A stretch of 64,000 nt of DNA from Lytechinus pictus. Its lineage: Eukaryota. The notes under the pieces were generated by a model. The model had not been told where the DNA came from, searched no databases, and was given only the letters and a program-made list of their open reading frames with translations. Below are positions 16,150 to 62,748 of the stretch, in pieces. Where the stretch lies: positions 13,082,001 to 13,146,000 of the forward strand of contig NC_087251.1 of NCBI RefSeq assembly GCF_037042905.1, read 5' to 3'. Every line of letters begins with the position of its first letter. Positions within the stretch are counted from its first letter, which is position 1. Both the position numbers and the translations under genes were made by a program.

Positions 16150-16350
16150 TATTGTTCCTCCAATTCGTTTGATGTCGACGCACGCGCGCGCTCGCACGTC
16201 TGCTAACAAAATATCGTCTGCAACGATTACACAGCGCAGACTCAGGAATAGCGAGAAGCTTTTTGCTCACAATTTTTTTTTTCTCCCAGCGCGAGCAAGC
16301 TCCAATAAATCACTACTGATCATTTTTCTCTGGGCAGACATCAGTCATCA
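16150..16350 (+). promoter_or_regulatory. Candidate core promoter (CpG-rich, CCAAT at 16302, TCAGTC initiator at 16341)
   Basis: GCACGCGCGCGCTCGCACG run (~16190), CCAAT and an Inr-like TCAGT, followed by ~600 nt of UTR-like sequence ending in a G|GTATGT donor. Confidence 0.45.
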
Positions 16351-16944
16351 CTTCGTTCCATGTCGATGCAAACCGGCTCGGAATCAACCTGAATGGATTG
16401 AGTGGAATTAGTCACACCTTTATAAGCTTGGGATCTAACCAACTGACCGCGGCCAGATTTTCTTCAATATATCAACACCTGCAACTGGATTTTTAGAGGA
16501 CAATTTTCCCTCACCGAACTCAAGGCAAGAGAGAAACTCCACCAGAAATGTCATCAATCAGTTCACTCGAGTGAATCGTACAAAAATATATTAATCTCAT
16601 TACAAAAAGTACACACATTGTTTGCAGTCGAATTTCTGTTGGCAAATATGAAATTCCAAGAGTGTGTGGGTCAAAACTAAAAAAATATTTTCAAAGGAAA
16701 TAATTTTGTATGACAGTTTCACGCTTCGGTTGGTCAGCTCGGGTCTGGAGAGGGTTAGCTGGAATATCAACTGCTTGCTGTCGCGATCGGACGCCAGTCA
16801 TTCGGCTGGAAAGTGGCAGAAACAAAGCGGTGTTTCCCGCAGACGTGGATATTGTGCCTGTGGTTCCTATTTGCATTTAAACGGAAATATCACGGTAACC
16901 AGGTTGGAAATCTTACAAGTTGCTGAAAACGAGGAATATTTCCG
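16343..16944 (+). other. Candidate non-coding first exon (5' UTR), possibly of the EGF/TM gene
   Basis: Runs from the Inr to donor GTATGT at 16945; contains only short uORFs; the gene's ATG exon has an acceptor that needs an upstream exon. Confidence 0.4.
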
Positions 16945-44445: not shown

Positions 44446-46035
44446 TACTGCACTGCTAAAGGTAAATCTGTTAAATGGAAGTTTCAATACTAACGAACAA
44501 CAAATTTCTCACCTGAAATACGCGACCATATATAGGTTCAAAATAATTTATGTATCCACAGTGCTTTTATTGTGACTTTCCACAATACTACCATAAACCC
44601 CACTTAAATTATTCACATTTCCAAAATTACTGCATCTATTGTTATGGCACATCTGTGAATGGTTGTTATGCTGCCTGTCACTCGTTATGATGATTTAAAA
44701 AGTATATATATTAGATTACGATAAACTGTTCTTTCAAAGAGTGTTATTTTTCCTTATAATTTATGAGAGCATTCTCCCCAACACGCCTTGATCGTACCCT
44801 ACTGAGGCATTGAAATTATTTCCATAGAATTCATTTTCACAAACGGAGACCTTTCACGTTGCTCCATACATCACCTCCGGGTAGTATTATTATTAACTCT
44901 ACAAGATCTACCGGTTCACCTCCTCTCCTATTGTGATTGGAAAGTCTTTGAATATTTGAAAAATATCATGTACTACAGGGGCGGAGTCAGAATCTCATAC
45001 ATCATGTACATGGGAGGTTGCATAGAAAGTCGATTGATTTTTTTTCCTCTGATCAATTTTGAAAATCAAAAGATGTAGGGGAATATCATACCAAAACTTT
45101 ATGATTTCCCGCAAAAATAATTTTAGAATGGTTGTCATTCTATATAATTCAGAGGACCTAAATTGCCTGCTCTTTTTTTTAAAGGGGGTACTATTAGACT
45201 TTGAAACTTCTCCTCACAGGGGTATAAAAATGTACAACAGGGGGGGGGGGGCACATTTCCTAAGTGCCCTCTGGATTCTTCTAGTGTTGCTTCGATTATA
45301 AAGACTTTAAAGGAAGGTTTGATGAAAGAGCTTGTTCTGATAGAATGGTCGCCAATTAATGCAGTAACCAACGTAATTAGATTCGTTTGCACCGGGCAGG
45401 ATCAATATTTAAGCTCACAGTTATTGATATCTTGCTGTATTATAAACATCGTGTTTTTTGGTCCCTTTGATATCCACATGGTACCTTACTGCATGTTATT
45501 ACACACTTTTATACTATGTTGACCTTTCTTTTGCCGTTCTGATTTTTTAAAACCCAATTGAAAAATAAATTGGCTTGCAAGGTGAAAATCATATTTGATG
45601 TTTGCTCTAGATCCATATTCAAAATATTAATTTCATCATTACACTGAGGAAAAAAACATAAATTGGTCTTACCTTCGTAAATATTTCTTCAGTATTTCAT
45701 AGATTATTGCATGTCACTCACAAAATTGTGTTGCTTTAAATAAATCTGCTTGAAATTCACCATGGAAATCCGATTGATTACAAATCAATTTTACCATTGA
45801 TGCTTAAATACTTTAGTATTTATGCTACGGCCCACGTGAGATTTCAAAATTTATATCAGTTAATCGTTCTGTTCAAATATATTGCATTACTCGGCCCTGG
45901 GATAGATTATTACGTTATGTACTTACTAAATGTCTTTCTCATTCTGTCTCTCATCCAGGTTTATTCTGCATTCTTAAAACGGGAGGAATATATTTGGACG
46001 CAAGGCGAGTCGTTCACACACCTGGGTAGATCATC

Positions 46036-46120
46036 ATGACGTCACAAACTAACACATTATGTATACTTTGTATCACGTTTCTCTTTGCAACATTCCACAC
46101 AGTCACTTCAACCAGTACAC
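46036..46120 (+). CDS. Coding exon 1: start codon and signal peptide ([28 protein letters not shown])
   Basis: ATC-ATG context with an upstream in-frame stop; hydrophobic core [13 protein letters not shown]; phase-1 donor GTGAGT at 46121. A pyrimidine tract + CAG (45956-58) implies the exon starts at 45959 and has an upstream non-coding exon. Confidence 0.85.
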
Positions 46121-49100
46121 GTGAGTTACCCCTCCTCGGGCAAATCTTTGCACTAATATGGCTTGAACATTTTAAATTGCATTTTCAATATAAATGGGAA
46201 AGTTTTCTTTCACTTTTGAGCAACAAAAGGAGCTTGACGGTGTCTTAATTAAATTCCCTTTTAAATCTAATCGAAAATCGAGCATTTATCATTTAAATGA
46301 TCTACGCGGAGACAATTTTTGCTGGGAATTTGATTAGTTTTTCTCGTGGCAAGTTTATCACATTTTTGCATCTTCTCAGTTGATAGGATTGTCACCATGC
46401 ATGCCATTTATCCTAATGTATTCGAAACTATTCTTGCTTTGAATCAAAATAGAATAATAATACATTCGTTTCGATATTCATTATGTAAAGAACTGTCTAT
46501 AACAATATGATTTCGGAACATCTTTAATTGAAAAAAATATTTGTAGGTAATTGTAACGTATTTACATATATATCTAGTCTTAAATAGGTTGAAGATGTTC
46601 TTGTACATTTGTTTTTTCTCTAATTAAAGGCCCACAACCCCATGTATTTCATACTTACCTTAGCAAGTGTAGTTCTCAAGTCTTGTTGCTTTAAAAATTG
46701 TTTTCTTTATTGTCTCGTATTGTCTTAACCATTAAACTATTTTTAAGCGCAGTAGTCATCATTATACTTGGTTATAACTATTGAATTGAATTGAATTTAT
46801 TACCAAATATCACTGTCAGGTACAATAACATGGAATAGTACATCACATATAAACAAAACATTTGGTAATTGGAGCTAACATAATAGCAAGATGCTAATCG
46901 AGGTTAGCCCCAAATAATGTCATTATAATACTTAAAAACAATAATTTTAACTAAATCTCTATATTGTACATCAAATTCAGTACTAATTCTACTTATTACT
47001 GTTGCAGAAAATTGCGATCATTTTTAGTGAACATATTTACACTATTTACAAGAAAAAATATCTTAATTATTCACAAAATCTTTATATATAATTATTTGTT
47101 TTCAGGCAGTATTTACCATGCCAAATTAATTATAATCTTCCAGTAGCATAAGATTTAACGATTTGCTAAATATCTTGCGACTGGGGGCGTTTCTGATATT
47201 ACTATTCCACTAGACACTTTACCAGAAGTCCCTAATTTTGACCAAAGTACTGGTAAAGGATAATAACTCTTAAAGTCATTGATTAATTTTGCCCATCTCA
47301 TTTTGATGTGAACTCCCATAGCCGCCGCTGTGCTGCCTCCATGTGCTAGCCATCCGTGTGAGAATGGAGGCACCTGTATCGAATATACCTCAGCATTCCA
47401 GTGTCGATGTACCAATGATTTCACAGGACTTAGATGTGAAATACCAGTATCAAATACAGGTAAATCTTAATTATAGAATACACTGGTATGGGGGCTTGGA
47501 GGCAATAGCCCCAAAAGTTCCACGACAGAGAACAACAAAACTGTGGGAAAAAAGTGAAAGAAAGAGGAAAGGGAAAAATATGAAACCATTTTCTAGATAT
47601 TAAATGTTAATATCTGTCACAAATTGTATTTTCAATTTGAAAGATCTTGCTTCACTTGCTCACGACTATTTAAAAACTGTCCCTTGTACACTTTTGTTTA
47701 TTACTCTACAGGAAGTAGGGAGTGATTGCCCAAATATGGTGTTTCAAGAAATTGAAAAAAAACCTGAAAAATAAGTAATATTGATTTCTTCATTCATTGA
47801 TTGATGTATTTACTATTTTACAATCCCTGGACTTATCTCCAACTTACTTGAATAAATGGATCCCACAGAAAATCGGCACTACTTTAATGAGTATTTACCT
47901 TATTCTGTATTACATACGATCCTAATGCTCATAAAACTTGATTGTATTGTTCCTTATCATTTTTGTTAATTCTGCTACAACAATTATTTATCTTGGCACA
48001 AATCGTCTTAACGTTTCTTTGAAGTTGCTTGGACTTTTACAATATTGATTTTTAGTAAAATATAACCAGTTTTTGCTTTAGAGTGTGAACGGTTCTCTTT
48101 CGTTTATCTTACATTAGCGTCTGTATGTGATGATAATCCCTGCGCTCACGGTGCCTGTGTGAGTTCAGCTTCGGACCGTTTCACATGTATGTGCCCCGGA
48201 GGTTGGAGGGGGACAGCATGTGAGATAGATGTGAATGAGTGCAACGGAGAGAGGGGCCCGAACCCCTGCACCAACGGGACAGTCTGCATCAATGAAGATG
48301 GGGGATACCGGTGTGAAGGTATGGATGAAATTGTCCAAAACTCTTTGTTGTAAAATTTAGCATATCATTTGCAAGGTACTACTGTTGGAGGGTTAACCAA
48401 ATTTTTATCATGGCAATTGCGATAGTTAGTAAAACCGAATGATAAATTCAATAGTATATTGTCTTATTTCCAAACATGAAATAATCTAGGATGCCCCTAT
48501 ACCAGAGAACATAAAAGGGGGGAAATCCCTGTACCGCTACCTTATATCACGACACTTCTATTAACATTATTGGGAGAACACAGTTGTCAGTTTATTCTTT
48601 CCAAAGAAAGGAAAATTTTGTTATGAAATATCAATGTAAAATAACATAATAATTCAATAACGATGATAATGGTAAGTGGTCTAATTTGAAGAGGTGCTAA
48701 TTTTATAGTCACTGTATTCCAATGGTGTCGTATTTTCATAGGACAACAAGGATTTAACTTATATACTAAACAAGTAATTTACTCCACATTCTAATGGAGT
48801 GTTCAGTCTAGCTTATATAATTTAGATATGTCTTAAACCCGTATTAACTTATATGTTAATATACCACACATTGCGTTATATTATCAATCTTTCCAATAAT
48901 CCATCCTAGCTCCTTGTGCCAGCCCTAGCCCTTGTCAAAACGGAGGTACTTGCTCGACGAAAAATACGAAGCCTTACTACACGTGCGAGTGCTTGCCAAA
49001 CTACGAAGGAGAAACATGTGATATTGTTATTGAAAGTAAGTTATCGATTGTTGTGAGTGTTCCTTATTTCTGTATTCTTTTATCTTATAATCCTGAAATT

Positions 49101-52100
49101 GATAGAGAAGTTGGTCCCCTTTGTTTGCAACAATGATTTAAAATATACTAAATATATTGAATACATAACATATCTTTTCATCTGGGATGTTCTTTTAACC
49201 TGTAACAGTGCATTTTGTAGTGAGTCATTCAGTTTTGATGATTAAAAGGCAATTCTCCGAAATATGAACAAAATACAAAGTAATTTTTAGGATGTAATTT
49301 TTTAATTGTTTTTATCGACCAGGAAATATTTTTGACACTACATTAGGCATACCTTTGAAAATGAATCTTGATTAATAAATAATATGCAACAGTACACTTT
49401 TCGATGAATACGGATTTAATGTTTTGATTCACAGTTCGTATACACATTGAAACTCATGAAGCTCAAAAGTTGGGTTACACAGAAATCACACCCTGCAAAA
49501 TTGCACTAGTTATTATTGTTGTCCCGCTTCTAGATGTTCAGTTGCACCAACTTAACCTGTTGTTACCAGCTAGTATCGCAGTACACATGTATGCACTTTA
49601 CCACTTCTGTAAACATTCCCTTGTATTGTATACCATTTTCATGTAGTTGAATGTTCTTGATGTTTAGTGCAGTTTGTATGATATGTACTGATCGCCAAGA
49701 TAGACTGACGTGAATAGTGTTGTGTGCATGAGATTTAATGTGAGCTTATTAGATATAGTAGAAGCCGTCGTCACAATTTATACAGTGTCATGATGCTTTA
49801 CCCTTCTCTCAAAAGTTTCTCTCATACCAAAGGCATCTGGGTGCCGAGTCTGGACCCAAGTTAATTCGGGACAAATCGTGACAAGCCTTGGAAGTAACTC
49901 GTGAAAGATGCGAACAATTCGTAGTTCATTTCATGTTGACTCTCAGAGCTCGGGTCCAGCTCGTAACAAGCAGATCTGTTGGAAATTTTGAGAGGGGCTT
50001 TTGTGAAAACCACCCCTTTTCCAATTTCCCTCCCGTGCGCTTCCCCAATTTCAATTACCTCATATGCTGTCATTCGCCATCAAACCCAGGAGACGATCCT
50101 TGCCGATCGGTGGCGAACATGTGTCTGAATGGAGGCACGTGTTTCTCGTTCGGAGGGGCAGCTCTGTGTTATTGCATGCCTGGATTCCAAGGCCAGCACT
50201 GTGAGATTGACACAGGTAAGAGAGGCTCGATGACATCACATGCCTTGCTGGCTGGCTCAGAAACCAGTAGTGCTAATGTTAGATATGGTAGATTAGTGCA
50301 CAGGCCGTTGCATGGACCGATGACAAAGATGGTTGTATGAACTAACTAACACCTTGCACTTGGATGTAAATCTGCCTTGCTGACATCAGTCAAAGGCGTC
50401 CCTGTTAGTTCGAACGTAGGGTGTGGGGGAACATTTCAAAAACTTACCAGAAATTCTGATTTTTTTTTTCAAATATCGGAGGCGCCGGTACGTTGTGATG
50501 AGGTAAAGGATGGGAGGGGCAAACTATTGTGTTGACAATGGATCGACCCTTATCAAGAACGTTGAGTGCCATACACACAATTATCATTGTCCAATAAATC
50601 TGATACGGTGATAGAAAGAGGTTAATGAATGTGAATTAGTTCCAAAAGACACAATCCTGTTTTGTGCCTCGGGCCGCAATCGATGGCTTTTCACTGTACA
50701 TGATCCTCTCAACAATACCTCAACGTACTAATCGAAAGCGAAATCATATTGAATAATCTAAAATTCTAGTTTTCCCCAGCTGTACCGCGCACAATCAACC
50801 CCCTCCATTTTTATTCGAAATACAGTAACGCCTTCGACTGGTATATTGACACTCTTATTGATTTCCGTGATCTTCTTGATCCCTTTCAATCTAATTGTTG
50901 AACCTAGAGTATAACTAACAAATAATTAATGTTTCATATATTGATGTCAGAAACGTAATCTATCTCTGATGAATAATTATTAAATACTTATATATCATAA
51001 TACATGGTCATACGATTGGTTTGCTGTATGGGGGTATAATTACGATTTCAAATCAGGGATTAAATCAATCACGATACACTACATATAATTATATATGATA
51101 CAATGATTATTATTATCAAAGTAGTAACAGGTACGTCATCAATTTCTTTTTGCGAATGGATATTATATATTTTGTAGTCACACATAAACATAAAACTGAA
51201 ATCCATTACATCATCATCATTATCATCATCATCGTCATCATCATCATCATCATCATCATCACCATCAAATCATCACCGTTATCACTATACTCACTGATAT
51301 TTGTACTTTTTATTTCAAATTTTTATTACCGAATACATGTAACTATGTAACTATAGTAATTATCATGTTATTGACTAATATAACCTGGATTTCTTCGGTA
51401 CCATGCATTGAAATATTTTGTTCTTAATCTCCTAACTCAGCTCCTTTGTCTAATCTTTCATGAGCTACAGATGTATGTCAGACCATTACATGCCAAAATG
51501 GCGGCACTTGTGAGAAGTCACGTGATCAAACAGCGTCGTGCATTTGCCCTCCCTATTATAGTGGCTTGCAATGTGACATATTTTTGTTATGTAAGTTAGC
51601 GTGTCAAATCTCTCCTATACATAAATACATATTTAAGACAGTTTGCCGTGGCGGGAATTGGGAACAGCTTTTTCTTATTTCAAATCATGCATGTTCTTTT
51701 GGTTATTTTTACCAAAATCATGCGGCCCTTTCGGTGAGCATTTGTTTTATCTCTGTCCCACATATTGGAACCTTGCAGTTTTGTTTCCTAAACCGTACAA
51801 TGATTGATATGCATTGTCCTATAAAGATGTAGCAACCCTCTTCATCTTTCTCCTATTTTGGTAGCATATACTAATATTCTTGTTTTGTGAAATGCACCAA
51901 AACTTGAAGTTTCTCCTTTAGCCGATTACATGGCAGGTGTAGCTTTGGATTACTTGTTAGTAATTTCATTGAAGTCTTTCTTAAACTTTGAAATTATTGT
52001 TTAGATTACAACATTTTCCATTGAAAAGACGAAAAAAAATCTATTATTATTAATGAAATTCATTGTAGCCTATTTGGTTGCATCGTCATAATGGTGTTTG

Positions 52101-55100
52101 TCACTATTTCTTTTAGTTCCTTTATAGAGTTTCTTTTATATAAAAATAGGGTTTTTATATCGTTATTATATGAAGGCTTACACGTCGCGTCATTAACGTA
52201 CTTTCCAATTCAGGAATGAAATAATATAATCATGATAATATTCAATCTTGTTAGCATGTTACCTTGTCCCATTACTATCAAACAAATGTCAGTTAGCCAT
52301 ATACATAGTATATTTCCATAGATTTTACTATCAGAATTATTATTGTCTTGCGTGCTAATGGCTGTAAGAACAGAAAAGATGAGTGAACGTGTGAATATAA
52401 GAAAAAAAGCTTTTGACGTTTTTCCTCTTCTTGTGCCTGCCATTTCAGCTCCCTGTGATAGCTTGCCTTGCAATGCATCTGCTACTTGTATTGAAGATTT
52501 AACACTGGATAGTGGTTTCGTATGCATGTGTGAGTTTGGTATACTAACCCTTGCCAGAGGTGGCGCCAGGTTGGGGGGGGGGGGGTGGTGACGACAACCT
52601 GAATGCCAATTTTCCTTTTCTCTCATTAAAAAGGGCTATTATAATAGGTTCATGCACACTCTTAATACCCTTCTTTATTTTGTTCCCGTATTTTGTTTCT
52701 CTCCTCCCCTTTTCAGTTTTTTTATTACTTACAAAAATTAAAGGGGACATTCAGCCCTCCCACTCCCAACATGGCGCCGTCCTCGAACCTTCTTAGCTAG
52801 GCATATATCGTTAATGGTTGCAAATGTTCCCGTTTGGTATGTCTTTTAACGATCTTTCAGCACGTCAATACCTTTGCACAGAAATTGAAATCTGTTTTAA
52901 AGTATTTCGTTTACATAATTTAGTTGATTGATTCAAAGAATTGGATCGAATAAACACACGAAGAGTAACAATATGTTTGTTGATTATTTATTACGGTTTT
53001 ATTAATCGTTCAAATTCAAAGCTGGTTATTTATATCTTGAACGTTCCTCTATTTATTTATTCATTTATTATGGATATGATCTTTTGAATGAATAAATCCC
53101 TTTTCTTAAATGATTTTGGAGAACGGTTAATTAAACATACCTAGTATTAGCCTGTTTAGTCTTTCTTGTAGATTGCTTGATATATATAAAAAAAATACAT
53201 GAATATAGCTGTAATTTAGGATGCTATAGTATTTGTATATTGGAGCATTATGCTCTGTGATATCTAATGGTATCTAGATTTGTCACTTTGAATAATGTGT
53301 AAGAAATTATATTGTATTGACATTTATTACTTTATAATATCTAGGGGCACTGTGTACATGACATTTTCCTCACTTATCCCAAACGGTTTAAAACTTTGCT
53401 CAAGTATAACTATAGTGTCATATAACAAAAACAAAAAAACCGGATGAATAATACTTACTTTAAAATGCATGTAAACGTTCGTGGATTCCATCACCCCTTG
53501 GGAGGTCACTAATGTTGATAATGATTGGATATTAAAAATATATATTTTTTATATTAAAAAGATAACTTACATGAAATACAATGTTACCACTTTGGGGAAT
53601 CTATAGGTTCAAAATGAAGTTGTCATCCGTTAGATAATAAGGAAAAAACAACTCACATAGACTATCAAGTGACCTGAACAGTCTAATGAGCCTTGCTCGT
53701 ATGATGGTACAAACATATCATTGCTTAAATCAGTCGAAAGAGGAAGCACGTTGTTTTCTAATCTTTAACTGACCCATTCAATCATATTAAAGTAATTATC
53801 ACACGCTCGATATGATTTCCCATCGTGTATTCAAAATTAGTGCAGCTTAATAGACCTTATTTATGTCACTTCTTCTTGTGTGAATTTATTATTACAGGGA
53901 GGAAAGGCCAACATTACCATTTTAATACATAACAACATTACAATTTTATATGTATTACTTTAACAAACATAAATGCATCGGTATAAATTTTGCATCATTC
54001 CTGGCTCAAGATATAAACATTCATATTATGATAAGTTAGATCATGTATTGCAGTATACATGTAACCGATTTTATATTTTGAAATAGTTAATGAAAACCAT
54101 ATATTACGTGAAAGTGAAAGTGCTTGTTGAACGAAATCTCTAGAGAATTAAACTGCTTATCAACCTGTAAACGGAAGATTAATTGGGTATTCAAGGAGGC
54201 AATATATAATAAGTGACAGTTCGCGGTAAACTTTAGACCGTGGTTAATGAATTTGTATCCGCCCCCTGCATCCTTTTTAATAATTAACCATAACTGAGTA
54301 ATCGTTTTCGAACAAAGCACCATAAATATCCTGTTATATCAGCATGGCGGTCTTGAGTGATAATAATCATGATAATCGAATTCAAACACAACGCACAAAA
54401 AAGCAAAACAGGAATGCATATTTCTATATTTAAAGTACATGTATAATTACCTCAGCATATTTAAGATAAAGCTCCAACTATAGTGATTAAGATTAGGCAA
54501 TTAGAGAATATTGACGCTTTACAAGTAAAAATCTTTATTGGAATGGATGCATTTAATGTTTATACGATCGTCTCGCCTCTGATTTAGCGCCATATGTGAA
54601 TAATACTTATAATTTTCGATGATATTTTAATCCGCTTTCTTATGTAGCGCCATGTGTGAAAGAACCTTGTCAACATGGTGCAACCTGCGTGCACAACCAG
54701 AGCACCCCTCTTGGCTTCACTTGTGAATGCACAGAAAATTACCAAGGATTATTGTGTGAAAATATGATACGTAAGTTTATAATGGTAACAATTTTGATAA
54801 TTCTTTGAAATATAGCTGCCTTTCACTAAATGTATCAGAAGTCCCTTAGCTTTCTACAATACTGCGACAGTTAACCGACCGTTATCTCTGATTCAATTTT
54901 TAACCTCCATCAAGCGATTTTGAAAATGTCAAATTTATTCAAAAAATATTGGCGGCAATGAATGTTGTGTGATTCTTTGTAAAGTTGTTACACAATACCA
55001 CACATTCCTTTAGTGAAGGTGAAACAACATAACTACAGAAGATTGAAGTAAATTACATTCACGTGATAATTAAGAAAGTCAACAATTGTAGTAGAAAGAT

Positions 55101-58100
55101 CTAAAGAAACTATTTATCTCAAATTTCTCCCATATAGCCCCGTGTTCGAAGGAACCGTGTCTCAACGGTGCTACTTGTCAGCCAGATGAAACTGCGTCAA
55201 CCGGTTACCAATGCTTATGCGATCAAGGATTTGAGGGACTAACGTGTGAAGTATATGTTATCTGTAAGCAAATATTATCCTCTTTATAATTGTTATATGT
55301 AATGTAATGCGAAAATTTTTATCTACTCTTCAATACCAAAATATGAAGTGAATTTTTGTGTAGTTGATAAATTGTAATGAACAATATATCAAAGGACTTG
55401 AGTTTCAGCAGTATAAAATATTAGAAAAAAATCATACTTTTTATATTCCATGTATATCCTCGTTATTGTGACAATCGTGTCAGAATGTCAGTTATTGTAA
55501 TATACTTAAAGTTTTGAATTATCGTAAATAAAGTATGGAAACAATTAATTGTATCAGCAATTACTGACATTAATCGTGTCACACTTGTATTGTATTTATT
55601 TATTATCTAAAATCTTTCTTCAGCTCCATGTTCCGAAGATCCGTGTCTCAATGGTGGGACTTGTCAACCCAACGACACGGCGTCAACCGGTTACCAATGC
55701 TTATGCGATCAAGGATTCGAGGGACCAACGTGTGAAATAGCTGTAATATGTAAGTAAATATTATCATTTCAACCATCACAGTATGTATTCTATCCATTGT
55801 AAACCACTCTCAACAAGGAGGGAATTTGTGTCTATTATAAAACCGCAGTTAAATATGAATGTGAGCTGTGGAATTTTTTTTTATGATTGGACCCTTCCCT
55901 TCTTTCTTGGTCTCAGTATCTCTCTCCTCTCGATCTCTGCCTGTCTGTCTACCTGTCTATTCTCTCTTTCCTAGCTCATTCTTTCTCTCTTTGCTTCATA
56001 AGACTTTATTTTTAAATTACAACGGTAATTTCCTTTTCTCACAATTTCACAGCACCATGCACAAGCAACCCTTGTGATAATGGAGGAACTTGTGAGGCTG
56101 TAGGGGGCGCTCTTGCAGAATATAATTGCATCTGTCAGAAAGGTTATAGAGGAAAACAATGTGAAATTGTTCTTCATGGTAAGTCCTGTCTTTCTCTCCA
56201 CGAATTTTCCTTCTTTTTAAGTGCATGAAATCTCCTATGTACTACAAATGAGACGTACAGGGTAGGTAAAAATAATGGTAACAAAAAATATGATAATTTC
56301 TTAGTGGTATTAAAATCTGTATGTAATCTGTTCCATATTTTGTAAGAAAGAAACAATTTGTTCCGGTTTGTCTGGTTCCCATTGCTACTTATGTAGTAGG
56401 TGTAGATTTATTATTACTTAAGGGTATACATTAATTTAAATAAATTAATGTAGCATAGTGTTTATCCACATTTCATAAATTGGAAATGAATACTTGACAA
56501 AAAGCTTTTATATACAGTAATCAACAAACACATTTTAATCAACAGAATATGATATCCATCTTAGAAACCGCCAGCACCTTACTTATTCCTTAGAGTATTA
56601 TTATGGTAATAACAGATTTAATGATTTGATTAGATAATCATTCAATAGTACAATTTTTACAATTCTTTTGTAGCAGTCTGTACTTTTGAAGGTGTAACAT
56701 ATCAAGAAGGCAGTGAAAGAAAGGAAGATTGTAATATGTGGTAAGTTAAGTTTTATTCACCATGACTATAGGCTTACACTAAAGCCCGTCTCACATTGTG
56801 CGATCCGGTGCGACACGATTTTTCAAGAAACCGCACTTTGCATTAAATATGAAAGTTCAAATAAGTAAAAAAAAAATTATTTAAGGTTTGTCATTTTGTT
56901 AGGAAAACTAAAATCATATTTTTACTTTGCGGCAAGCCCTATGGTCGGAATAAATTCCAAATAGGCCTCAAATCGCAGCAGATGATAACGTCATTACGAT
57001 TTGGAAGTGAAAATGTTTTTATTCATTCAGGGAGGCTCTAACTGGACTGAAAATCGATTTCAGTAGTCCTACCACTATTCTGAACTCTGATCCGTAATAT
57101 TTTATTAGTTGGAATATCCATATCAAATGTTATCACAATTAATTTGAAATTTGGATCGCAATGAATCGCATAGTGTGAGACGGGCATTATAGATGAAAAG
57201 GGAACTGTTGCATTAACTTACAACTGGCCAACTCAGGTCATATTCTATCACTTTTTTTCTGTGCTGAAACCAATTATGAAGGACACTATAGGGCCATACA
57301 AACAATGATTTTATGCCCCCATCCCTGTAAAAAATAAAAACAAAAATAATGAAAGGTTGACAGCCTTTTTTTCGTGTCAGATTTTTGTAACAAAGTAACT
57401 TGTACAAGTTTATTATGATTCTCAATATAATTTATTTGATGTTTACCTAAGTATTGACCTATATGTATTATTGGCATACAAATTAAAATTGAGATGTAAG
57501 TTGAAAAGATTTTTAAAAACTTTTTGGAAACAGTGGTCCATAAATAAAGTGCGAAATTACAACTATGTTTAGAATATAGCAATAATCATGTTTCATTTGT
57601 TTCTGTACATAGTCATTGTCAGCAAGGTTCATGGCACTGTACAGACAAATTTTGCGGGTAAGTACATCACATTTTTACAAATTACAGTTGTTCTTTCTCA
57701 AAACACAACCCCCAAAATATAAAAAAAAATGTTTAAATCAACCAGGAATGTACTCAGTTCATTATAATGTCGACTTTGTATACGTTTTAGATACTTAAAC
57801 ATTTGAAATAACATCTTATGTTAAAAATCATTGCTCCAAATTGATTATTCGTGTTGTCAATCCCAAAAAAGGAGTTATTTTTATTTAAAAAATTCATAAA
57901 CATATCCATGGTGTAAGATATTACACTGTATCAAAAAATCATCCACAACAACTCTTTAATCTTGATATGAAAGACATTTTGTTCAGCCATGTTTGCAAAA
58001 TGAATATTATCTCCTATCTTCTGTTTTCTACGGTTACAGTGAATTCATGGTTTCATTTGCCTTTGCAAATACCAATTCTAATGAAAATGATGATGATGAG

Positions 58101-61100
58101 GAGGAATTTTCAAAGTGAGTATTTGTGTGTTTTTATTTTTTTGCAGGAGTTTCTGCATTTTTATCATAAATCAATGATAAATCAACATGTTCACATAATA
58201 CCAAACACATAAATGAATACAATTTAAATGTGACAATTGAAGAGATACATTATAAATAATACAGAAAAGACTGATAATTAAATCATACATAAGCATGTGA
58301 TGTACTGAGTTCGGGAAAATAAAGGGGCCAGCTATTATAAGCACAAAGGTGCTTGAAGCGATAGCAGCCAGGAGAGGGCTTTCATGAAAACCATCATGAA
58401 TCATATTTTGACAAAATGATGTCATGAAATAATAAAAAAAAAAAAAAAATCGGTTGGGAAAATCATTTATGGTATAAAGCGAAATATTCTATTTAAATTT
58501 TTAAAAGATCTTTTTCACAGTTTATTACAATATCATCCATTTGTATCATAATATGAATAGTTCAAGACTTCCTCATACATCCCTTTTCATTTCAGAATAA
58601 AAAATTAAGTAAACTTCCTGAATGATTTAGAAATGCTAAACAAATTGAATGATATAGAAAAAGCTTAAGTTCCACAAACTTTTTTTTTTTTTTTTTTTGG
58701 GGGGGGTCAATTTTGCTTATTAATTTCCTTTACAGTTTCTCATAAATATCTCTGCACTCTTGACGGTTGAATATGATATATAGGCGTCATCTAGAGTAGC
58801 AAAGTCTAGTAGCAAGTATAAGAATTTGCTTTGGAGCTACCCTTGTATTAACAGTAGGACCACGTGGAAAAGAGTCAAATTTTGACTAATATCTTCTAAC
58901 ACTTCTACAATATTATGGTGTTAAAATTTCACAACCAGTGTCTATATACGATGACACAGAGGAATTTATAACATTGACTTAATTAACCCCAATATTTCTT
59001 CTCATTTTACAGTACACTCAAAGAAGACATTGCTGAATATTTTGATATCAATGTCAACATGATTCAAGTACTTACGGTAAATTCAATTTCTCTATTATTT
59101 CATGGTTCTATCACTGTAAAACAGCGATAATGAAAGTACACCATGTGGTGTCGTTTAACACTCATTTGTGCTACACTTTTAGAAAAGTTATCATTAAAAT
59201 AAAAGAAGTTCCTGCAGCAGAGTCTCGAGAACACCTGTAATCTTACCAGATTGCGTAATCTTACAGGAAATTGGTATTTGGTGTATGGAATCTGACAAAT
59301 TTCCTTGAATAAAACACCCTATTTAAACAGACCTGTTCTGTTAAATTGCAGAAAATTCCTGTTTTATGAATTTACAGAATGATTCTGTTATTGCTTTCTG
59401 CAAAATCTTCTTTTTTTCCTGTAAAATCACAGTTTTTTAAACAGTGTATAATAATAGATTATTCCTAGTATTTGAACACTATTTGATGTTATGCCCAAAG
59501 TTCATAGTGCATTTTTTTGTCAGTTCTATTAATAAACATTTAAATTCTTCCAACTGACATTCTCCTTTCATATAATAATTCAAAAATTGTAATACAATTC
59601 ACTTGAATATTTAAAGGAGAATGAAACCCTTGAAACCAGCTGAATCCATATCAAAGAGAAAAATCAAAGAAACATATTGTTGAAAGTTTGAGGAAGATTG
59701 AATGAATAATGAGAAAGTTATGAGCATTCGAATATTGAGATCACTAGTGCCATGTAGATCCTCCCAACGGCAATGCGACCAAGATCTGTGATATCACACA
59801 CATACAACTCCCTCATTACTTTAGTACTTATTTCACTTATATTCTCACTTTTATAGAGTCTATCACAAGGTGAGGTGTTCTCTTTATGAGATGACAAGTA
59901 CAGAGGTTTCACAACATTATATCATTGATGAATCGTTTGTCATATGATTAGAATGAGCAAAAAGAGATGTTTTGGGGTATATTTTCAGTGTCCAAATGGG
60001 AGAGTTGTACGTGTGTGACATCACAGATCTTGGTCGCATTGCCAATGGGAGGATCTCCATAGCATTAGTGATCTCGACATTCAAATGCTCATAACTCTTT
60101 TATTGCTAGTCCTATTTTTCTCAAAGTTTTGTTGATCTTATTCTTTGATTTTTCTGCTTTCACAAAAGCTAACTTGCTCCAAGAGTTTCATTCTCCTTTA
60201 AGGTCTGGTCCTTGGTCAGAACACCAATCAGAGCACTGTCTGATGTTGTTCTTAAGACTGTAATTTACAGTATTGGCTACTTATTCAAATCATTGTTCAT
60301 TGAGTATAGATATACATTTTCCCAAATTCTAAGTGATTCCTTACATTACTGTATACACATAGTCTTTGAGTTTGAGTAATATACGTGGCCTCTCAGATGC
60401 TCTCAAGCTTGAATTATCTTGAAACTCTAGTCATTTCACTAAATGAATAAATTTTACTGTGTATAAACTTTTTTATGTTTATTAAACTAAATCATTTATT
60501 TTCCTTGATTAGAAAATATTGAATATTTGTGAATATTAATTACTGTTTAAGAGAGAATAAATATGACTTCGTGCTTAATTGTGTTGATTTACACAGACCT
60601 TCATTTAATTTTCACTCTGAGCTATGGATACTGCTTTCAGAGTTTACAATAACTTTGCACTGAACAGTTTTAATGAGAAATTGAATAGTCTATTTCTATG
60701 AATCAAAGACCTAGGTTGTCACTGACCATTTTTCAACAATGATAATTCGATTACATTAATATACTCTCAAAACAATCTCTTATGATTTCCAACATTCACT
60801 GTTCAGGTATCTGGAAATCCAGCTCAAGTCCAGTTCCAGTTACAAGACACACTAGACTCTGAGGTTGATATAGAAAACGTTGCTGCAGATATGTTAAGAC
60901 AGGTAAGAAAATGTTGCATTTCTATGTACATGTGTACTGGTGGATTGATTAATTGAATTTATTTCTGCGTTCAATAACATGGCAAAACATAAAACAGTAT
61001 TACAAAAATTACATAATATTGTGCATATATCATACACTTTTTCATTCAAATACTAAAAAATATATGTATGGTAATGTTTTTTTTTTCAATCAATATTATA

Positions 61101-62748
61101 TGTGAATGCAGGAAACTATATTGTGTGTGGTGTTGCGATTGGTGGCTGGAGTGTGGCTTTCAAATATTTCTAAATGTAGCTAATGAAAGTCATTTAATAA
61201 TACTTTGAAAATTGTATTCAATGAGTTACTTAGTGTATTATTCCAGATGAATTTATCACAAAAAAATCTATTAAACACCCTTTCATCACAAAGAAATTAG
61301 AGTATTATAATATTTTTGACCATTGAGAATAGTCAATAGGAGAAATAGTCTCATTTGATATTTTATGAAAATTACTGTTATTAATATTCTTTTGCCTTTT
61401 TTTTTTTACATAGTTTGTGACAGGTACATATGCATTCCACTACAACCAAGCCTCATATTCCATCAATTCTCGGACGGTGGTCATCGAACGTCGAGATAGC
61501 GACAACCATGCTAACAATATCACTCATAAAGATGAGGGTCAACAGTTCATTAGTACAACATTGCTAATTGTGTGTATTGTTGTCAGTACAATACTGGTCT
61601 TTGCAGTTCTCTTTGGCATAGCAATTATAGTGGTAAGGATAAAACTAAAATTATTCATTTTATTACAGGGATAAAAACAATTGATTTTGATATTCTATTC
61701 GTGTCAATATATTGACAATTTTAAGCGAAATAGTATATGATTAAATAATTTTCCATCATTTGTTTTACCATTGCTGACCTCTGCAAACATTAAATTCTTT
61801 TCAGGTTTATTTGATTTACAGCATTTTAAGCTAAATTTGCTTTATCATTTCAGTGTAAGTTAAACAGAATGATGTCATTTTAAATCTTCTTTTTTTTCAT
61901 TTCCATATTAGGTCTACAAAAGAAGATCAAGGAAAGAACAGATTTATTGCAGAAAAGACAAGAATACAAATGCGGTAGGTACCATAGTAATCACTGTTAA
62001 ATAGTGGGTTATAGAGTGAATAATATGATTTATGTACTACTTATTCGGAAGGTGTCTCACTACATACCAATAACACCATGCAGTGTTGGAATAGAATGTA
62101 CGATCATACTGTTTCAAATTTATAGTTATAAGTACATTTTTTTTTCTTTTTTTTTAAAATTCATTCTAAATTTGTGATAAATTAATAAAGGGTCTTAATT
62201 GCCAAACCACTCATTTTACAATGACAACATCATTTTTAAGAAGCTATTCAACATGATTGCTGATATCTTTAACAGTAATTGTAGAGTTTGTGCTGAATCT
62301 ATTATTATCTTTCCTCAGAATGATAAAATTCAGCCCCATTGCTTAGCTACAGTTTACTGTTATGGTAGCTTTACCAACAATTACAATTACTATGGAAACA
62401 GGCTCAACATTTATTTAAAATTATGGTTTCTATGGAAGTTACCAATGATGGCAAAGTGTTCTTTGATATTTGGTGCAATGGATGTCGTGATAAAGGCCTA
62501 TAGGGTGATGCTATGATCTTTATTTTAAATTATTATTAACACTTCTTCCTTTTCTATTCCCCTTCCTATCATGATCCATGCAGTCAAACAATGTGGCAGG
62601 AGGTGCAATAAAATACCATAAGAACGTGTACAACCCTGTCCCTCCGTGTCCACCAGCGAGAGATGTACCTGTAGAAGTAGCTGAAATTAGGTTACAAAAT
62701 GGCGCCGGAAAACATGATGTTAACATCAACATGGAAGCCAGAGTATAG
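46036..62748 (+). CDS. Multi-exon gene (19 coding exons, 723 aa): EGF-repeat/vWC type I transmembrane protein, Serrate/Jagged-like architecture lacking DSL
   Basis: Manual splicing: join(46036-46120,47322-47459,48118-48318,48910-49035,50090-50215,51471-51590,52449-52529,54648-54770,55138-55263,55624-55749,56053-56178,56674-56740,57613-57657,58040-58114,59013-59076,60807-60902,61414-61632,61912-61974,62584-62748). All introns are GT..AG with matching phases, giving one ORF of 2172 nt. An in-frame TAG (46027-46029) precedes the ATG. Confidence 0.9.
47322..47459 (+). CDS. Coding exon 2: EGF1 ([32 protein letters not shown])
   Basis: 6-Cys EGF spacing, TAG acceptor, GTAAAT donor, 138 nt, phase 1-1. 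Confidence 0.93.
48118..48318 (+). CDS. Coding exon 3: EGF2 plus 4-Cys calcium-binding-type EGF3 ([30 protein letters not shown])
   Basis: EGF motifs, TAG acceptor, GTATGG donor, 201 nt, phase 1-1; overlaps ORF 48159..48353. Confidence 0.92.
48910..49035 (+). CDS. Coding exon 4: EGF4 ([35 protein letters not shown])
   Basis: 6-Cys EGF, TAG/GTAAG, 126 nt, phase 1-1. Confidence 0.93.
50090..50215 (+). CDS. Coding exon 5: EGF5 ([34 protein letters not shown])
   Basis: 6-Cys EGF, CAG/GTAAG, 126 nt, phase 1-1; inside ORF 49888..50340. Confidence 0.93.
51209..51266. repeat. (ATC)n microsatellite in intron 5
   Basis: Direct reading. Confidence 0.9.
51471..51590 (+). CDS. Coding exon 6: EGF6 ([33 protein letters not shown])
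   Basis: 6-Cys EGF, CAG/GTAAG, 120 nt, phase 1-1. Confidence 0.93.
52449..52529 (+). CDS. Coding exon 7: truncated 4-Cys EGF7 ([27 protein letters not shown])
   Basis: Pyrimidine tract + CAG acceptor. The strongest phase-1 donor is GTGAGT at 52530 (81 nt); a weaker in-phase GTATAC lies at 52539. Confidence 0.8.
52555..52785. mobile_element. Degenerate GC-terminated MITE-like insertion just after coding exon 7
   Basis: CAGAGGTGGCGCCAGG + poly-G ... C-rich + TGGCGCCGTCCTCG (approximate inverted termini). Confidence 0.5.
54648..54770 (+). CDS. Coding exon 8: EGF8 ([35 protein letters not shown])
   Basis: 6-Cys EGF, TAG/GTAAG, 123 nt, phase 1-1. Confidence 0.93.
55138..55263 (+). CDS. Coding exon 9: EGF9 ([35 protein letters not shown])
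   Basis: 6-Cys EGF, TAG/GTAAG, 126 nt, phase 1-1. Confidence 0.93.
55624..55749 (+). CDS. Coding exon 10: EGF10 ([35 protein letters not shown]), paralogous copy of exon 9
   Basis: 6-Cys EGF, CAG/GTAAG, 126 nt, phase 1-1. Confidence 0.93.
56053..56178 (+). CDS. Coding exon 11: EGF11 ([35 protein letters not shown])
   Basis: 6-Cys EGF, CAG/GTAAG, 126 nt, phase 1-1. Confidence 0.93.
56674..56740 (+). CDS. Coding exon 12: first half of vWC-like module ([23 protein letters not shown])
   Basis: C-x3-G-x2-Y-x2-G...DCNxC motif; TAGCAG tandem acceptor; GTAAG donor, phase 1-2. Confidence 0.9.
56783..57186. mobile_element. PIF/Harbinger-like MITE in intron 12
   Basis: TIR GCCCGTCTCACA(T/C)T..GCGAT / ATCGCATAGTGTGAGACGGGC, flanked by TAA and TTA. 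Confidence 0.78.
57613..57657 (+). CDS. Coding exon 13: second half of vWC-like module ([16 protein letters not shown])
   Basis: Completes CNxCxC..G...CT...C; TAG/GTAAG, phase 2-2, 45 nt. Confidence 0.9.
58040..58114 (+). CDS. Coding exon 14: juxtamembrane domain start with acidic tract ([24 protein letters not shown])
   Basis: CAG acceptor, GTGAGT donor, phase 2-2, open frame. Confidence 0.82.
59013..59076 (+). CDS. Coding exon 15 ([22 protein letters not shown])
   Basis: Long pyrimidine tract + CAG, GTAAAT donor, phase 2-0; amphipathic helix/strand pattern. Confidence 0.85.
59174..59446. mobile_element. CACTA/EnSpm-like MITE in intron 15
   Basis: TA|CACTTTTAGAAAA ... TTTTTAAACAGTG|TA, with repeated TTACAG/CTGTAA subterminal motifs. 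Confidence 0.65.
59615..60197. mobile_element. Intact Kolobok-like MITE in intron 15 with TTAA target site duplication
   Basis: TTAA|AGGAGAATGAAAC ... GTTTCATTCTCCT|TTAA; ~200-nt imperfect arms, e.g. GCAATGCGACCAAGATCTGTGAT / ATCACAGATCTTGGTCGCATTGC. Confidence 0.88.
60807..60902 (+). CDS. Coding exon 16 ([32 protein letters not shown])
   Basis: CAG acceptor, CAG|GTAAGA donor, phase 0-0, 96 nt. Confidence 0.87.
61414..61632 (+). CDS. Coding exon 17: stalk and transmembrane helix ([24 protein letters not shown])
   Basis: Poly-T + TAG acceptor, GTAAGG donor, phase 0-0; ~24-residue hydrophobic run; ORF 61417..61674. Confidence 0.92.
61912..61974 (+). CDS. Coding exon 18: basic stop-transfer and start of the cytoplasmic tail ([21 protein letters not shown])
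   Basis: Pyrimidine tract + TAG, GTAGGT donor, phase 0-0; KRRSRK follows the TM helix (positive-inside rule). Confidence 0.88.
62584..62748 (+). CDS. Coding exon 19 (last): cytoplasmic tail ending ...[10 protein letters not shown]
   Basis: Pyrimidine tract + CAG acceptor, phase 0, open to TAG at 62746-62748. Confidence 0.85.
   Translation, partial: SNNVAGGAIKYHKNVYNPVPPCPPARDVPVEVAEIRLQNGAGKHDVNINMEARV

What the first reader, a model, noticed from the sequence alone, without database searches (positions are those of the whole stretch)
46036..62748. A 'headless' Serrate/Jagged-like membrane protein: EGF array + vWC + juxtamembrane domain + TM + MExxV tail, but no MNNL/DSL
Seen: the signal peptide is spliced straight onto EGF1, then 11 EGF modules, a DCNxCxC..G...CT...C module, ~120 aa of alpha/beta-patterned sequence, a TM helix and a short tail. 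The in-frame stop 9 nt before the ATG blocks N-terminal extension of exon 1. I saw no DSL-like exon (C..YYG..C...C.PR.D..GHY.C) in intron 1 or in the 45 kb upstream. Known: EGF-array + vWC + TM is the Serrate/Jagged layout, and DSL is required for canonical Notch activation; DSL-less EGF membrane proteins (DLK1/2, DNER) act as non-canonical modulators but lack this vWC. Inference: either a Serrate-derived paralogue that lost its receptor-binding head (decoy, cis-inhibitor or adhesion molecule) or an independent family. Pipelines would likely mislabel it 'fibropellin-like' or 'notch-like'.
Basis: partly seen in the sequence, partly recalled or inferred. Interest (0 to 1): 0.75.

Follow-up and report, generated by a model that had tools for sequence, protein, structure and literature searches.

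The report
DSL-less EGF membrane protein of sea urchins
This is a real, expressed sea-urchin gene for a membrane protein with eleven EGF modules, a small von Willebrand C-like module and an EpCAM/SEA-like domain next to the membrane. It has no Notch-binding head, databases give it misleading names, and a descent from Serrate is not supported.

Summary
A 19-coding-exon model at 46036-62748 (+) translates exactly to Lytechinus pictus XP_054758872.2, 'fibropellin-1-like isoform X2', 722 aa. They also show that the ATG exon is not the first exon: it starts at 45959 and is spliced to a non-coding exon ending at 16944, 29 kb upstream.

No DSL or MNNL is coded in the window. The nearest copies on this chromosome are 11 and 26 Mb away.

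JAG1 residues 861-1067 match only weakly, though in the same domain order. The species' own Serrate shares only a generic 22-residue VWC motif, has different intron positions and has no MExxV tail. Only echinoid orthologues were found (Lytechinus, Strongylocentrotus, Diadema).

Verdict: a conserved, uncharacterised, misnamed echinoid family. 'Headless' is right. 'Serrate-derived' is unproven and the less likely reading. The scan earlier noted a different DSL gene with a SEA-like module elsewhere in this genome (s1-306782).

The parts
16238..16944 (+). Non-coding first exon (5' UTR). The 3' end at 16944 is firm. The 5' end is only estimated from contig length.
   Evidence: The loose 30-mer that precedes 45958 in contigs of X1 and X4 maps uniquely to 16914-16943, followed by G|GTATGT. 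Contigs extend 329-707 nt upstream of the joint. There is no long ORF here.
45959..46120 (+). Exon 2: 77 nt of 5' UTR with an in-frame TAG at 46027-46029, the ATG at 46036 and the signal peptide (28 codons plus 1 base).
47322..47459 (+). EGF1 exon (phase 1-1).
48118..48318 (+). EGF2 plus a truncated calcium-binding EGF (DVNEC..., four cysteines only).
48910..49035 (+). EGF4 exon.
50090..50215 (+). EGF5 exon, a cassette that is skipped in the 614-aa isoforms.
51471..51590 (+). EGF6 exon (cassette).
52449..52529 (+). Truncated EGF7 exon (four cysteines; cassette).
54648..54770 (+). EGF8 exon.
55138..55263 (+). EGF9 exon.
55624..55749 (+). EGF10 exon, a near-duplicate of EGF9.
56053..56178 (+). 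EGF11 exon.
56677..56740 (+). VWC-like module, first exon. An alternative NAGNAG acceptor at 56674 adds one Ala.
57613..57657 (+). VWC-like module, second exon ([16 protein letters not shown]).
58040..58114 (+). Juxtamembrane domain exon 1 (strand 1 and an acidic loop).
59013..59076 (+). Juxtamembrane domain exon 2 (helix 1 and strand 2).
60807..60902 (+). Juxtamembrane domain exon 3 (strand 3 and helix 2).
61414..61632 (+). Last strands of the juxtamembrane domain, a linker and the TM helix.
61912..61974 (+). Stop-transfer exon ([21 protein letters not shown]).
62584..62748 (+). Last coding exon: cytoplasmic tail with a YNPV motif and C-terminal NMEARV, then the stop codon.

Best explanation
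**Shown**
- The locus is the single-copy Lytechinus pictus gene for a type I membrane glycoprotein that occurs in several splice forms, the longest 722-723 aa.
- Its layout is: signal peptide; 11 Notch-type EGF modules; a 6-cysteine VWC N-subdomain-like module; a compact alpha/beta juxtamembrane domain of the SEA-like / EpCAM-Trop2 C-domain fold; a TM helix; and a conserved 75-aa tail.
- Of the EGF modules, 9 carry the O-fucose consensus, 2 are truncated to four cysteines, and the middle ones are cassette exons.
- It has no MNNL/C2 and no DSL, so it is not a canonical Notch ligand.
- It is conserved in camarodont urchins and in Diadema. No relative was found outside echinoids.

**Inferred**
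- It works as a cell-surface adhesion or signalling receptor.
- The EGF stalk would bind a partner.
- The pair 'cysteine-rich module + SEA-like domain' next to the membrane would control dimerisation and/or regulated ectodomain shedding. This is the design of EpCAM/Trop2 (TY + C-domain) and of the Notch NRR (LNR + HD).
- The tail would couple to endocytosis (YNPV) and to a PDZ scaffold (-MEARV).
For: - **Gene model.** Exact translation to XP_054758872.2.
- **Transcript.** RNA joints for exons 1-5 and the upstream non-coding exon.
- **Pfam.** EGF x9, EGF_CA, PF23244 at 31-37 bits (cut-off 27), VWC at 24.5 bits (below cut-off). No DSL, MNNL, SEA, LNR or avidin family was listed in the scan at E <= 0.01.
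- **No head in the genome neighbourhood.** No DSL or MNNL within 11 Mb on C7 and no DSL motif in the window.
- **Structure.** The model of residues 459-620 has pLDDT 76.9 and the order beta-alpha-beta-beta-alpha-beta-beta.
- **Conservation.** The VWC + juxtamembrane region is 73% identical between Lytechinus and Diadema. The tail is conserved, including YN[PR]V and ME-A-[RK]-V.
- **Sugar sites.** O-fucose and O-glucose consensus sites are present.
- **Design precedent.** SEA-like domains paired with an adjacent structured domain behave as proteolytic switches (PMC6586460).
Against: - There are no functional data at all. Shedding, dimerisation, PDZ binding and endocytosis are inferred from fold and motifs.
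- Sequence support for the EpCAM C-domain is at chance level. PF21283 scores E 0.04 and 14.6 bits against a cut-off of 25.9, only for the Lytechinus sequence and not for Strongylocentrotus or Diadema.
- The structural model rests on only four closely related sequences.
- JAG1's VWC-to-TM region also matches, so the fold does not separate the origins.
- The restriction to echinoids rests on searches limited by shared words and length, plus one exhaustive HMMER search with a 73-aa exon.
Confidence: 0.6

Rival explanations
1. It is a Serrate/Jagged-derived paralogue that lost the MNNL-DSL head and acts as a decoy or cis-modulator of Notch signalling.
For: - It has the same order of parts as the C-terminal half of Jagged: EGF array, VWC, folded juxtamembrane domain, TM.
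- Foldseek aligns model residues 1-157 in the same domain order with JAG1/JAG1b residues 858-1071, at E 1e-3 to 1.5e-2 and ranks 2-5 and 21.
- The VWC motif DCNxCxCxxGxxxCxxxxCG is shared with the urchin's own Serrate.
- From my own knowledge, the tail ME-x-x-V resembles vertebrate JAG1's RMEYIV.
- The gene lies on the same chromosome (C7) as Delta and Serrate.
Against: - TM-scores to JAG1 are only 0.28-0.36.
- Beyond the 22-aa generic VWC motif, nothing aligns with the own Serrate.
- Own-genome searches with the juxtamembrane exon, the TM exon and a VWC + juxtamembrane profile hit only the gene itself.
- Intron positions differ. Here the introns fall at DCNM^C and FCG^E; in Serrate the intron falls at CSK^VWCG, and the TM and tail share one exon.
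- Serrate's roughly 110-aa cysteine-rich spacer is absent here, and its tail ends ...EKEPT.
- The nearest EGF relatives are fibropellin-like arrays on C3, C11 and C10. Serrate is not among the 148 best matches.
- Delta and Serrate lie 11 and 26 Mb away.
Confidence: 0.2
2. It is a divergent relative of the EpCAM/Trop2 family. The juxtamembrane domain would be truly homologous to the EpCAM C-domain, with the thyroglobulin module replaced by a VWC-like module and an EGF array added.
For: - The best structural matches in four libraries are EpCAM/Trop2.
- AFDB cluster hits include invertebrate thyroglobulin-type-1 proteins, with E down to 1.8e-5.
- A near full-length but sub-threshold PF21283 alignment exists.
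- The general plan is the same: cysteine-rich module, alpha/beta domain, TM, short tail.
Against: - No TY (PF00086) or EpCAM_N domain was listed in the Pfam scans.
- PF21283 is absent for the Strongylocentrotus and Diadema sequences.
- Identity in the structural alignments is 11-16%.
- SEA-like folds recur in many unrelated receptors.
Confidence: 0.15
3. It is an annotation artefact: the 3' part of a larger DSL-bearing gene whose head exons lie outside the window or are used from another promoter.
For: - The ATG exon turned out not to be the first exon.
- Intron 1 is 29 kb long.
Against: - The upstream exon has no long ORF.
- The TAG at 46027 closes the frame 9 nt before the ATG.
- Three RNA contigs from two species labels and two studies carry the same join.
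- All RefSeq isoforms in three genera start at the same Met.
- No DSL or MNNL lies within 11 Mb.
Confidence: 0.03

Closest known systems
Jagged/Serrate, C-terminal half (VWC to TM)
   Same: - EGF array followed by a VWC-type module, a folded alpha/beta juxtamembrane domain, a TM helix and a short tail.
- A weak Foldseek match in the same domain order to JAG1 861-1067.
- A hydrophobic C-terminal ME-x-x-V like JAG1 (own knowledge).
   Different: - No C2/MNNL and no DSL.
- Only the N-subdomain of VWC, with no cysteine-rich spacer after it.
- Different intron positions.
- No sequence similarity in the juxtamembrane domain.
- 11 EGF modules instead of the roughly 15 EGF exons seen at the Serrate locus.
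- The urchin's own Serrate lacks the MExxV end.
EpCAM / Trop2 (TACSTD1/2)
- A cysteine-rich module directly N-terminal to it.
- Single TM helix and short tail.
- Both are described as SEA-like plus an adjacent domain (PMC6586460).
   Different: - No thyroglobulin type-1 domain and no EpCAM N-domain.
- A long EGF array is present instead.
- The Pfam C-domain score is far below the cut-off.
DSL-less EGF membrane proteins (DLK1/2, DNER)
   Same: Type I membrane proteins with Notch-type EGF repeats and no DSL. They are known as non-canonical Notch modulators (own knowledge).
   Different: From own knowledge, they have neither a VWC-like module nor a SEA-like juxtamembrane domain. No sequence relation was tested here.
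Fibropellins and Notch receptors (the names RefSeq gives)
   Same: EGF repeats 40-49% identical to the giant fibropellin-like arrays of the same genome.
   Different: - No avidin-like C-terminal domain.
- No LNR, NOD or ankyrin repeats.
- Membrane-anchored and small.
SEA-EGF membrane proteins (MUC3/12/13/17, IMPG2) and the non-canonical C2-DSL/21-EGF/SEA-like gene of this genome (s1-306782)
   Same: - EGF modules combined with a SEA-type domain next to the membrane.
- MUC3B and IMPG2 appear among the Foldseek hits.
   Different: - No Pfam SEA match.
- No G|SVVV-type autoproteolysis motif in the sequence.
- No sequence match to the DSL-bearing EGF loci sampled on C3.

Membership tests
Jagged/Serrate (DSL ligands) | N-terminal C2/MNNL domain (PF07657) | tested here: not met
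   The whole-genome HMM search gives 3 hits, none in the window; the nearest are at C7:24.27 and 39.29 Mb. It is absent from the Pfam scan of P0009.
Jagged/Serrate (DSL ligands) | DSL domain (PF01414) | tested here: not met
   There are 11 genomic hits and none within 11 Mb. No DSL motif occurs in six frames of the window. It is absent from P0009. The transcript's 5' end is non-coding.
Jagged/Serrate (DSL ligands) | VWC-type cysteine-rich region after the EGF array | tested here: inconclusive
   PF23244 scores 31-37 bits (above its cut-off of 27). PF00093 VWC scores 24.5 bits (below 27.6) and covers profile positions 1-37 of 57. The cysteine-rich spacer of the own Serrate is missing.
Jagged/Serrate (DSL ligands) | Sequence or profile similarity and shared intron positions with the species' own Serrate in the VWC-to-TM region | tested here: not met
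   blastp aligns 22 aa only and hhalign finds nothing. Intron positions differ.
Jagged/Serrate (DSL ligands) | Fold of the VWC-to-TM region like JAG1 | tested here: inconclusive
   Foldseek gives E 1e-3 to 1.5e-2 and TM 0.28-0.36, in the same domain order. A comparison of the juxtamembrane domain alone was not possible with the remaining quota.
EpCAM/Trop2 | Thyroglobulin type-1 domain (PF00086) and EpCAM N-domain | tested here: not met
   Not listed in the Pfam scans of P0009 and of its C-terminal part.
EpCAM/Trop2 | C-terminal domain (PF21283) | tested here: inconclusive
SEA domain (PF01390) | Pfam SEA profile match; G|SVVV autoproteolysis motif | tested here: not met
Fibropellin | C-terminal avidin-like domain; secreted protein | tested here: not met
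   No avidin family appears in the Pfam scan. A TM helix is present at about 620-650.
Notch receptor | LNR repeats, NOD/HD, ankyrin repeats | tested here: not met
   None appear in the Pfam scan of P0009.

The most novel reading that the evidence does not exclude
The family is an echinoid-specific receptor built as a force- or contact-gated proteolytic switch. The VWC-like module would cap a SEA-like domain as the LNRs cap Notch's HD. It may descend from a DSL-ligand ancestor by loss of the head, and it may tune Notch-type signalling or adhesion without binding Notch through a DSL.
Probability: 0.15. Interest if true: 0.7.

Novelty: new variant of a known kind. Interest (0 to 1): 0.4.

Why it matters
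Sea urchins are a main model for Delta/Notch-dependent cell-fate decisions. Their genomes hold very many EGF-repeat genes that pipelines name by best hit. This gene shows that one set of isoforms named 'notch homolog', 'fibropellin-1-like' or 'SNED1' is really a distinct family. It is conserved between Lytechinus and Diadema, is membrane-anchored, and has a domain combination not described before: EGF array + VWC-like module + EpCAM/SEA-like juxtamembrane domain + PDZ-type tail. If the juxtamembrane pair acts as a regulated shedding unit, it would be a new natural example of that design and a candidate modulator of cell contact signalling. Lytechinus pictus is an organism where knock-outs are feasible. 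If not, the result still corrects the annotation and removes a tempting but weak 'headless Serrate' label.

Tried and rejected
1. **Pfam on single non-EGF exons** gave nothing useful.
2. **Exhaustive HMMER search** with the 73-aa TM exon found only the Diadema orthologue and a 166-aa ENA fragment of unknown source. It also returned a spurious bacterial Big_13 repeat protein, P0003.
3. **Two word-indexed homologue searches** restricted to the non-EGF part found only echinoid proteins. This does not prove absence elsewhere.
4. **Own-genome searches** with the juxtamembrane exon, the TM exon and the A1 profile found no paralogue.
5. **tblastn of the C-terminal 264 aa** against sampled DSL-bearing EGF loci on C3 found nothing. 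I did not locate the SEA-like exon of those genes.
6. **hhalign and blastp against the own Serrate C-terminus** gave only the VWC motif.
7. **The loose end after exon 50215 in run X4** (a 26-mer) does not occur in the window. It differs at 3 of 22 positions from the start of exon 51471, and I left it unexplained as an allele, a paralogue or a mixed consensus.
8. **Literature searches** by accession number found no paper. A search for Jagged1 + juxtamembrane + SEA domain found nothing relevant.
9. **No read-laying on the 3' half** was possible, because only one call was allowed. Exons 6-19 therefore rest on the exact match to the RefSeq model and on orthologues.
10. **No binding prediction** was run, because no binding is claimed.
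Full report
**What is in the sequence.** The window is G000:C7:13082001-13146000 of an 812-Mb sea-urchin assembly. Stop-free, cysteine-rich segments on the + strand between 47.3 and 56.2 kb have the EGF pattern.

Reading the DNA at each border gave phase 1-1 EGF exons. It also gave two small exons that together spell [36 protein letters not shown], four further small exons, a TM exon, a stop-transfer exon and a last exon ending NMEARV-stop.

Using an orthologue as a guide, I fixed all borders by script. The 19 coding exons are 46036-46120, 47322-47459, 48118-48318, 48910-49035, 50090-50215, 51471-51590, 52449-52529, 54648-54770, 55138-55263, 55624-55749, 56053-56178, 56677-56740, 57613-57657, 58040-58114, 59013-59076, 60807-60902, 61414-61632, 61912-61974 and 62584-62748. 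They translate exactly to P0009. P0009 is XP_054758872.2, 'fibropellin-1-like isoform X2' of Lytechinus pictus, encoded on a contig of the same length as C7.

**Transcript evidence and the 5' end.** Contigs of three RNA-type runs (two species labels, two studies) carry the joints 46120>47322, 47459>48118, 48318>48910 and 49035>50090.

The exon with the ATG begins at 45959, behind ...tcatccag, and the contigs continue 329-707 nt further 5' in sequence that is not adjacent. The 30 letters before the joint map uniquely to 16914-16943, followed by G|GTATGT. The gene therefore has a non-coding first exon about 29 kb upstream.

That exon holds no long ORF. The TAG at 46027-46029 closes the reading frame just before the ATG. 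No head-coding exon is spliced in.

I mapped only the last 30 nt of the upstream part, so its 5' limit (about 16238) is an estimate. Exons 6-19 were not checked with reads.

**No Notch-binding head.** Whole-genome HMM searches find DSL at 11 places and MNNL at 3 places. On C7 these lie at 24.27 Mb and 39.29 Mb, which is 11 and 26 Mb from the gene. A six-frame motif scan of the window finds no DSL-like pattern. Pfam on the full protein lists EGF (9 stretches), EGF_CA and PF23244, and no DSL, MNNL, LNR, SEA or avidin family.

**The parts in detail.**
- *EGF modules.* Nine carry the O-fucose consensus C2-x4-[ST]-C3 and three the O-glucose consensus.
- *Truncated modules.* Two modules stop after the fourth cysteine ([30 protein letters not shown] and [25 protein letters not shown]). 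Each runs straight into the next EGF. Both truncations are present in Strongylocentrotus and Diadema, and the first is confirmed by RNA joints.
- *Isoforms.* RefSeq lists isoforms of 574-723 aa. Their lengths fit skipping of the symmetric exons 50090-50215, 51471-51590 and 52449-52529, plus a NAGNAG acceptor at 56674/56677.
- *VWC-like module.* It scores 37.4 bits on PF23244 (cut-off 27), 36.3 bits on Pacifastin_I and 24.5 bits on VWC, covering profile positions 1-37 of 57. It is therefore the N-terminal subdomain only.
- *Tail.* It is conserved from Lytechinus to Diadema, including YN[PR]V and the end ME-A-[RK]-V.

**The juxtamembrane domain.** An AlphaFold2 model of residues 459-620, made with four orthologues, has mean pLDDT 76.9. 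It shows beta hairpins for the VWC-like part and then strand-helix-strand-strand-helix-strand-strand. The fold searches gave these results:
- *Foldseek and the ESM Atlas.* Foldseek on PDB and on Swiss-Prot AFDB, and the ESM Atlas, also put EpCAM/Trop2 first.
- *AFDB clusters.* These add invertebrate thyroglobulin-type-1 proteins.
- *Language-model neighbours.* These were SEA clusters, at weak scores.

By sequence the link is at chance level. PF21283 gives E 0.04 for Lytechinus only. I therefore call it a SEA-like / EpCAM-C-like fold, not a family member.

**Is it a beheaded Serrate?** I located the species' own DSL ligands. The C7:24.26 Mb locus has about 8 EGF exons, and I infer it is Delta. 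The C7:39.27-39.29 Mb locus has about 15 EGF exons and a VWC followed by VWCGPSSC..., and I infer it is Serrate.

*Against.*
- Serrate's C-terminal exons read ...DCNRCRCDDGLIVCSK | VWCG + a roughly 110-aa cysteine-rich and linker stretch + IRLFLTFN... | GMTVDAVC... | STDGG... | TM and tail ending EKEPT.
- Only 22 residues around DCNxCxC...CG align with the window's protein (41% identity, mostly cysteines). hhalign finds nothing else.
- Introns sit at different places.
- The spacer is absent here, and Serrate has no MExxV end.
- The EGF array is 40-49% identical to giant single-exon fibropellin-like arrays on C3, C11 and C10. Serrate is not among the 148 best matches.
- The VWC + juxtamembrane profile, the juxtamembrane exon and the TM exon hit nothing else in the genome.

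*In favour.*
- Foldseek aligns the model in the same domain order with JAG1/JAG1b 858-1071, at E 1e-3 to 1.5e-2 but TM only 0.28-0.36.
- The order of parts is that of Jagged's C-terminal half.

I put the Serrate-derived reading at about 0.2.

**Distribution.** Two homologue searches restricted to the non-EGF part, and one exhaustive HMMER search with the TM exon, returned only Lytechinus pictus, L. variegatus, Strongylocentrotus purpuratus and Diadema antillarum, plus one unnamed ENA fragment. The VWC + juxtamembrane region is 73% identical between Lytechinus and Diadema, so it is under strong constraint. Absence outside echinoids is not proven.

**How it most likely works (inference).** The protein is a type I surface protein with a glycosylated EGF stalk for binding. 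Next to the membrane it has a cysteine-rich module followed by a SEA-like domain. Hayward et al. (PMC6586460) showed that SEA-like domains with a structured N-terminal neighbour (Notch, EpCAM, Trop2, dystroglycan, protocadherins) behave as contact-gated proteolytic switches. Lone SEA domains, in contrast, are shed constitutively.

By analogy, I propose regulated shedding and/or EpCAM-like cis-dimerisation. The conserved tail would link to endocytosis and a PDZ scaffold. None of this was tested.

**Earlier notes of the scan.** Note s1-306782 reports a different gene of this genome with a C2-DSL head, 21 EGFs and a SEA/MAD-like module. It shows that SEA-like juxtamembrane domains occur in urchin DSL proteins. 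I found no sequence link between that kind of locus and this gene. Note s1-324871 describes the downstream CFAP97D-annexin gene. That explains protein P0010, a database entry joining this gene's TM exon to annexin sequence.

**Verdict.** The gene is real and conserved. It is already predicted in RefSeq under misleading names, and I found no paper that cites its accession numbers. 'Headless' is right. 'Serrate-derived' is weakly supported and the less likely reading. Interest is moderate.

Noticed in passing
window 46779-47150 (inside the intron between the ATG exon and EGF1): RNA contig depth here is 5-20 times that of the exons in all three contig runs. The 161-bp core is a young interspersed repeat, with at least 40 scored copies (278 candidates) at 94-98% identity across the genome. 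There is no Rfam match.
   Followed up: partly
P0010 (994 aa, MetaClust); window exon 61414-61632 and the next gene beyond the window's end: This is a database protein, about 89% identical to the Lytechinus protein and probably from Strongylocentrotus. It joins this gene's TM exon (...GIAIIV) to annexin-containing sequence, that is, to the neighbouring CFAP97D-annexin gene noted in s1-324871. It is either a read-through or chimeric transcript or a mis-assembly, and it implies that the two genes are neighbours in both genera. In P0010 the VWC-like residues are replaced by other residues (...HAIANKGHGTAQINFVGI...).
   Followed up: partly
G000:C3:41.60-41.72 Mb, C3:47.03 Mb, C3:33.28-33.55 Mb: Clusters of DSL hits lie next to giant single-exon EGF arrays with open frames of 855-2766 aa. 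One of them has an MNNL hit at C3:41601761. This is a large expansion of non-canonical DSL/EGF genes in this urchin.
   Followed up: partly
window 56671-56680: A NAGNAG tandem acceptor (tag|cag) gives isoforms with or without one alanine between EGF11 and the VWC-like module. Both forms are present in RefSeq models of Lytechinus and Strongylocentrotus.
   Followed up: yes
window 50215, run X4: Two contigs continue after exon 50090-50215 with a 26-mer that is absent from the window. It differs at 3 of 22 positions from the start of exon 51471. It may be an allele, another species' version or a mixed consensus.
   Followed up: partly
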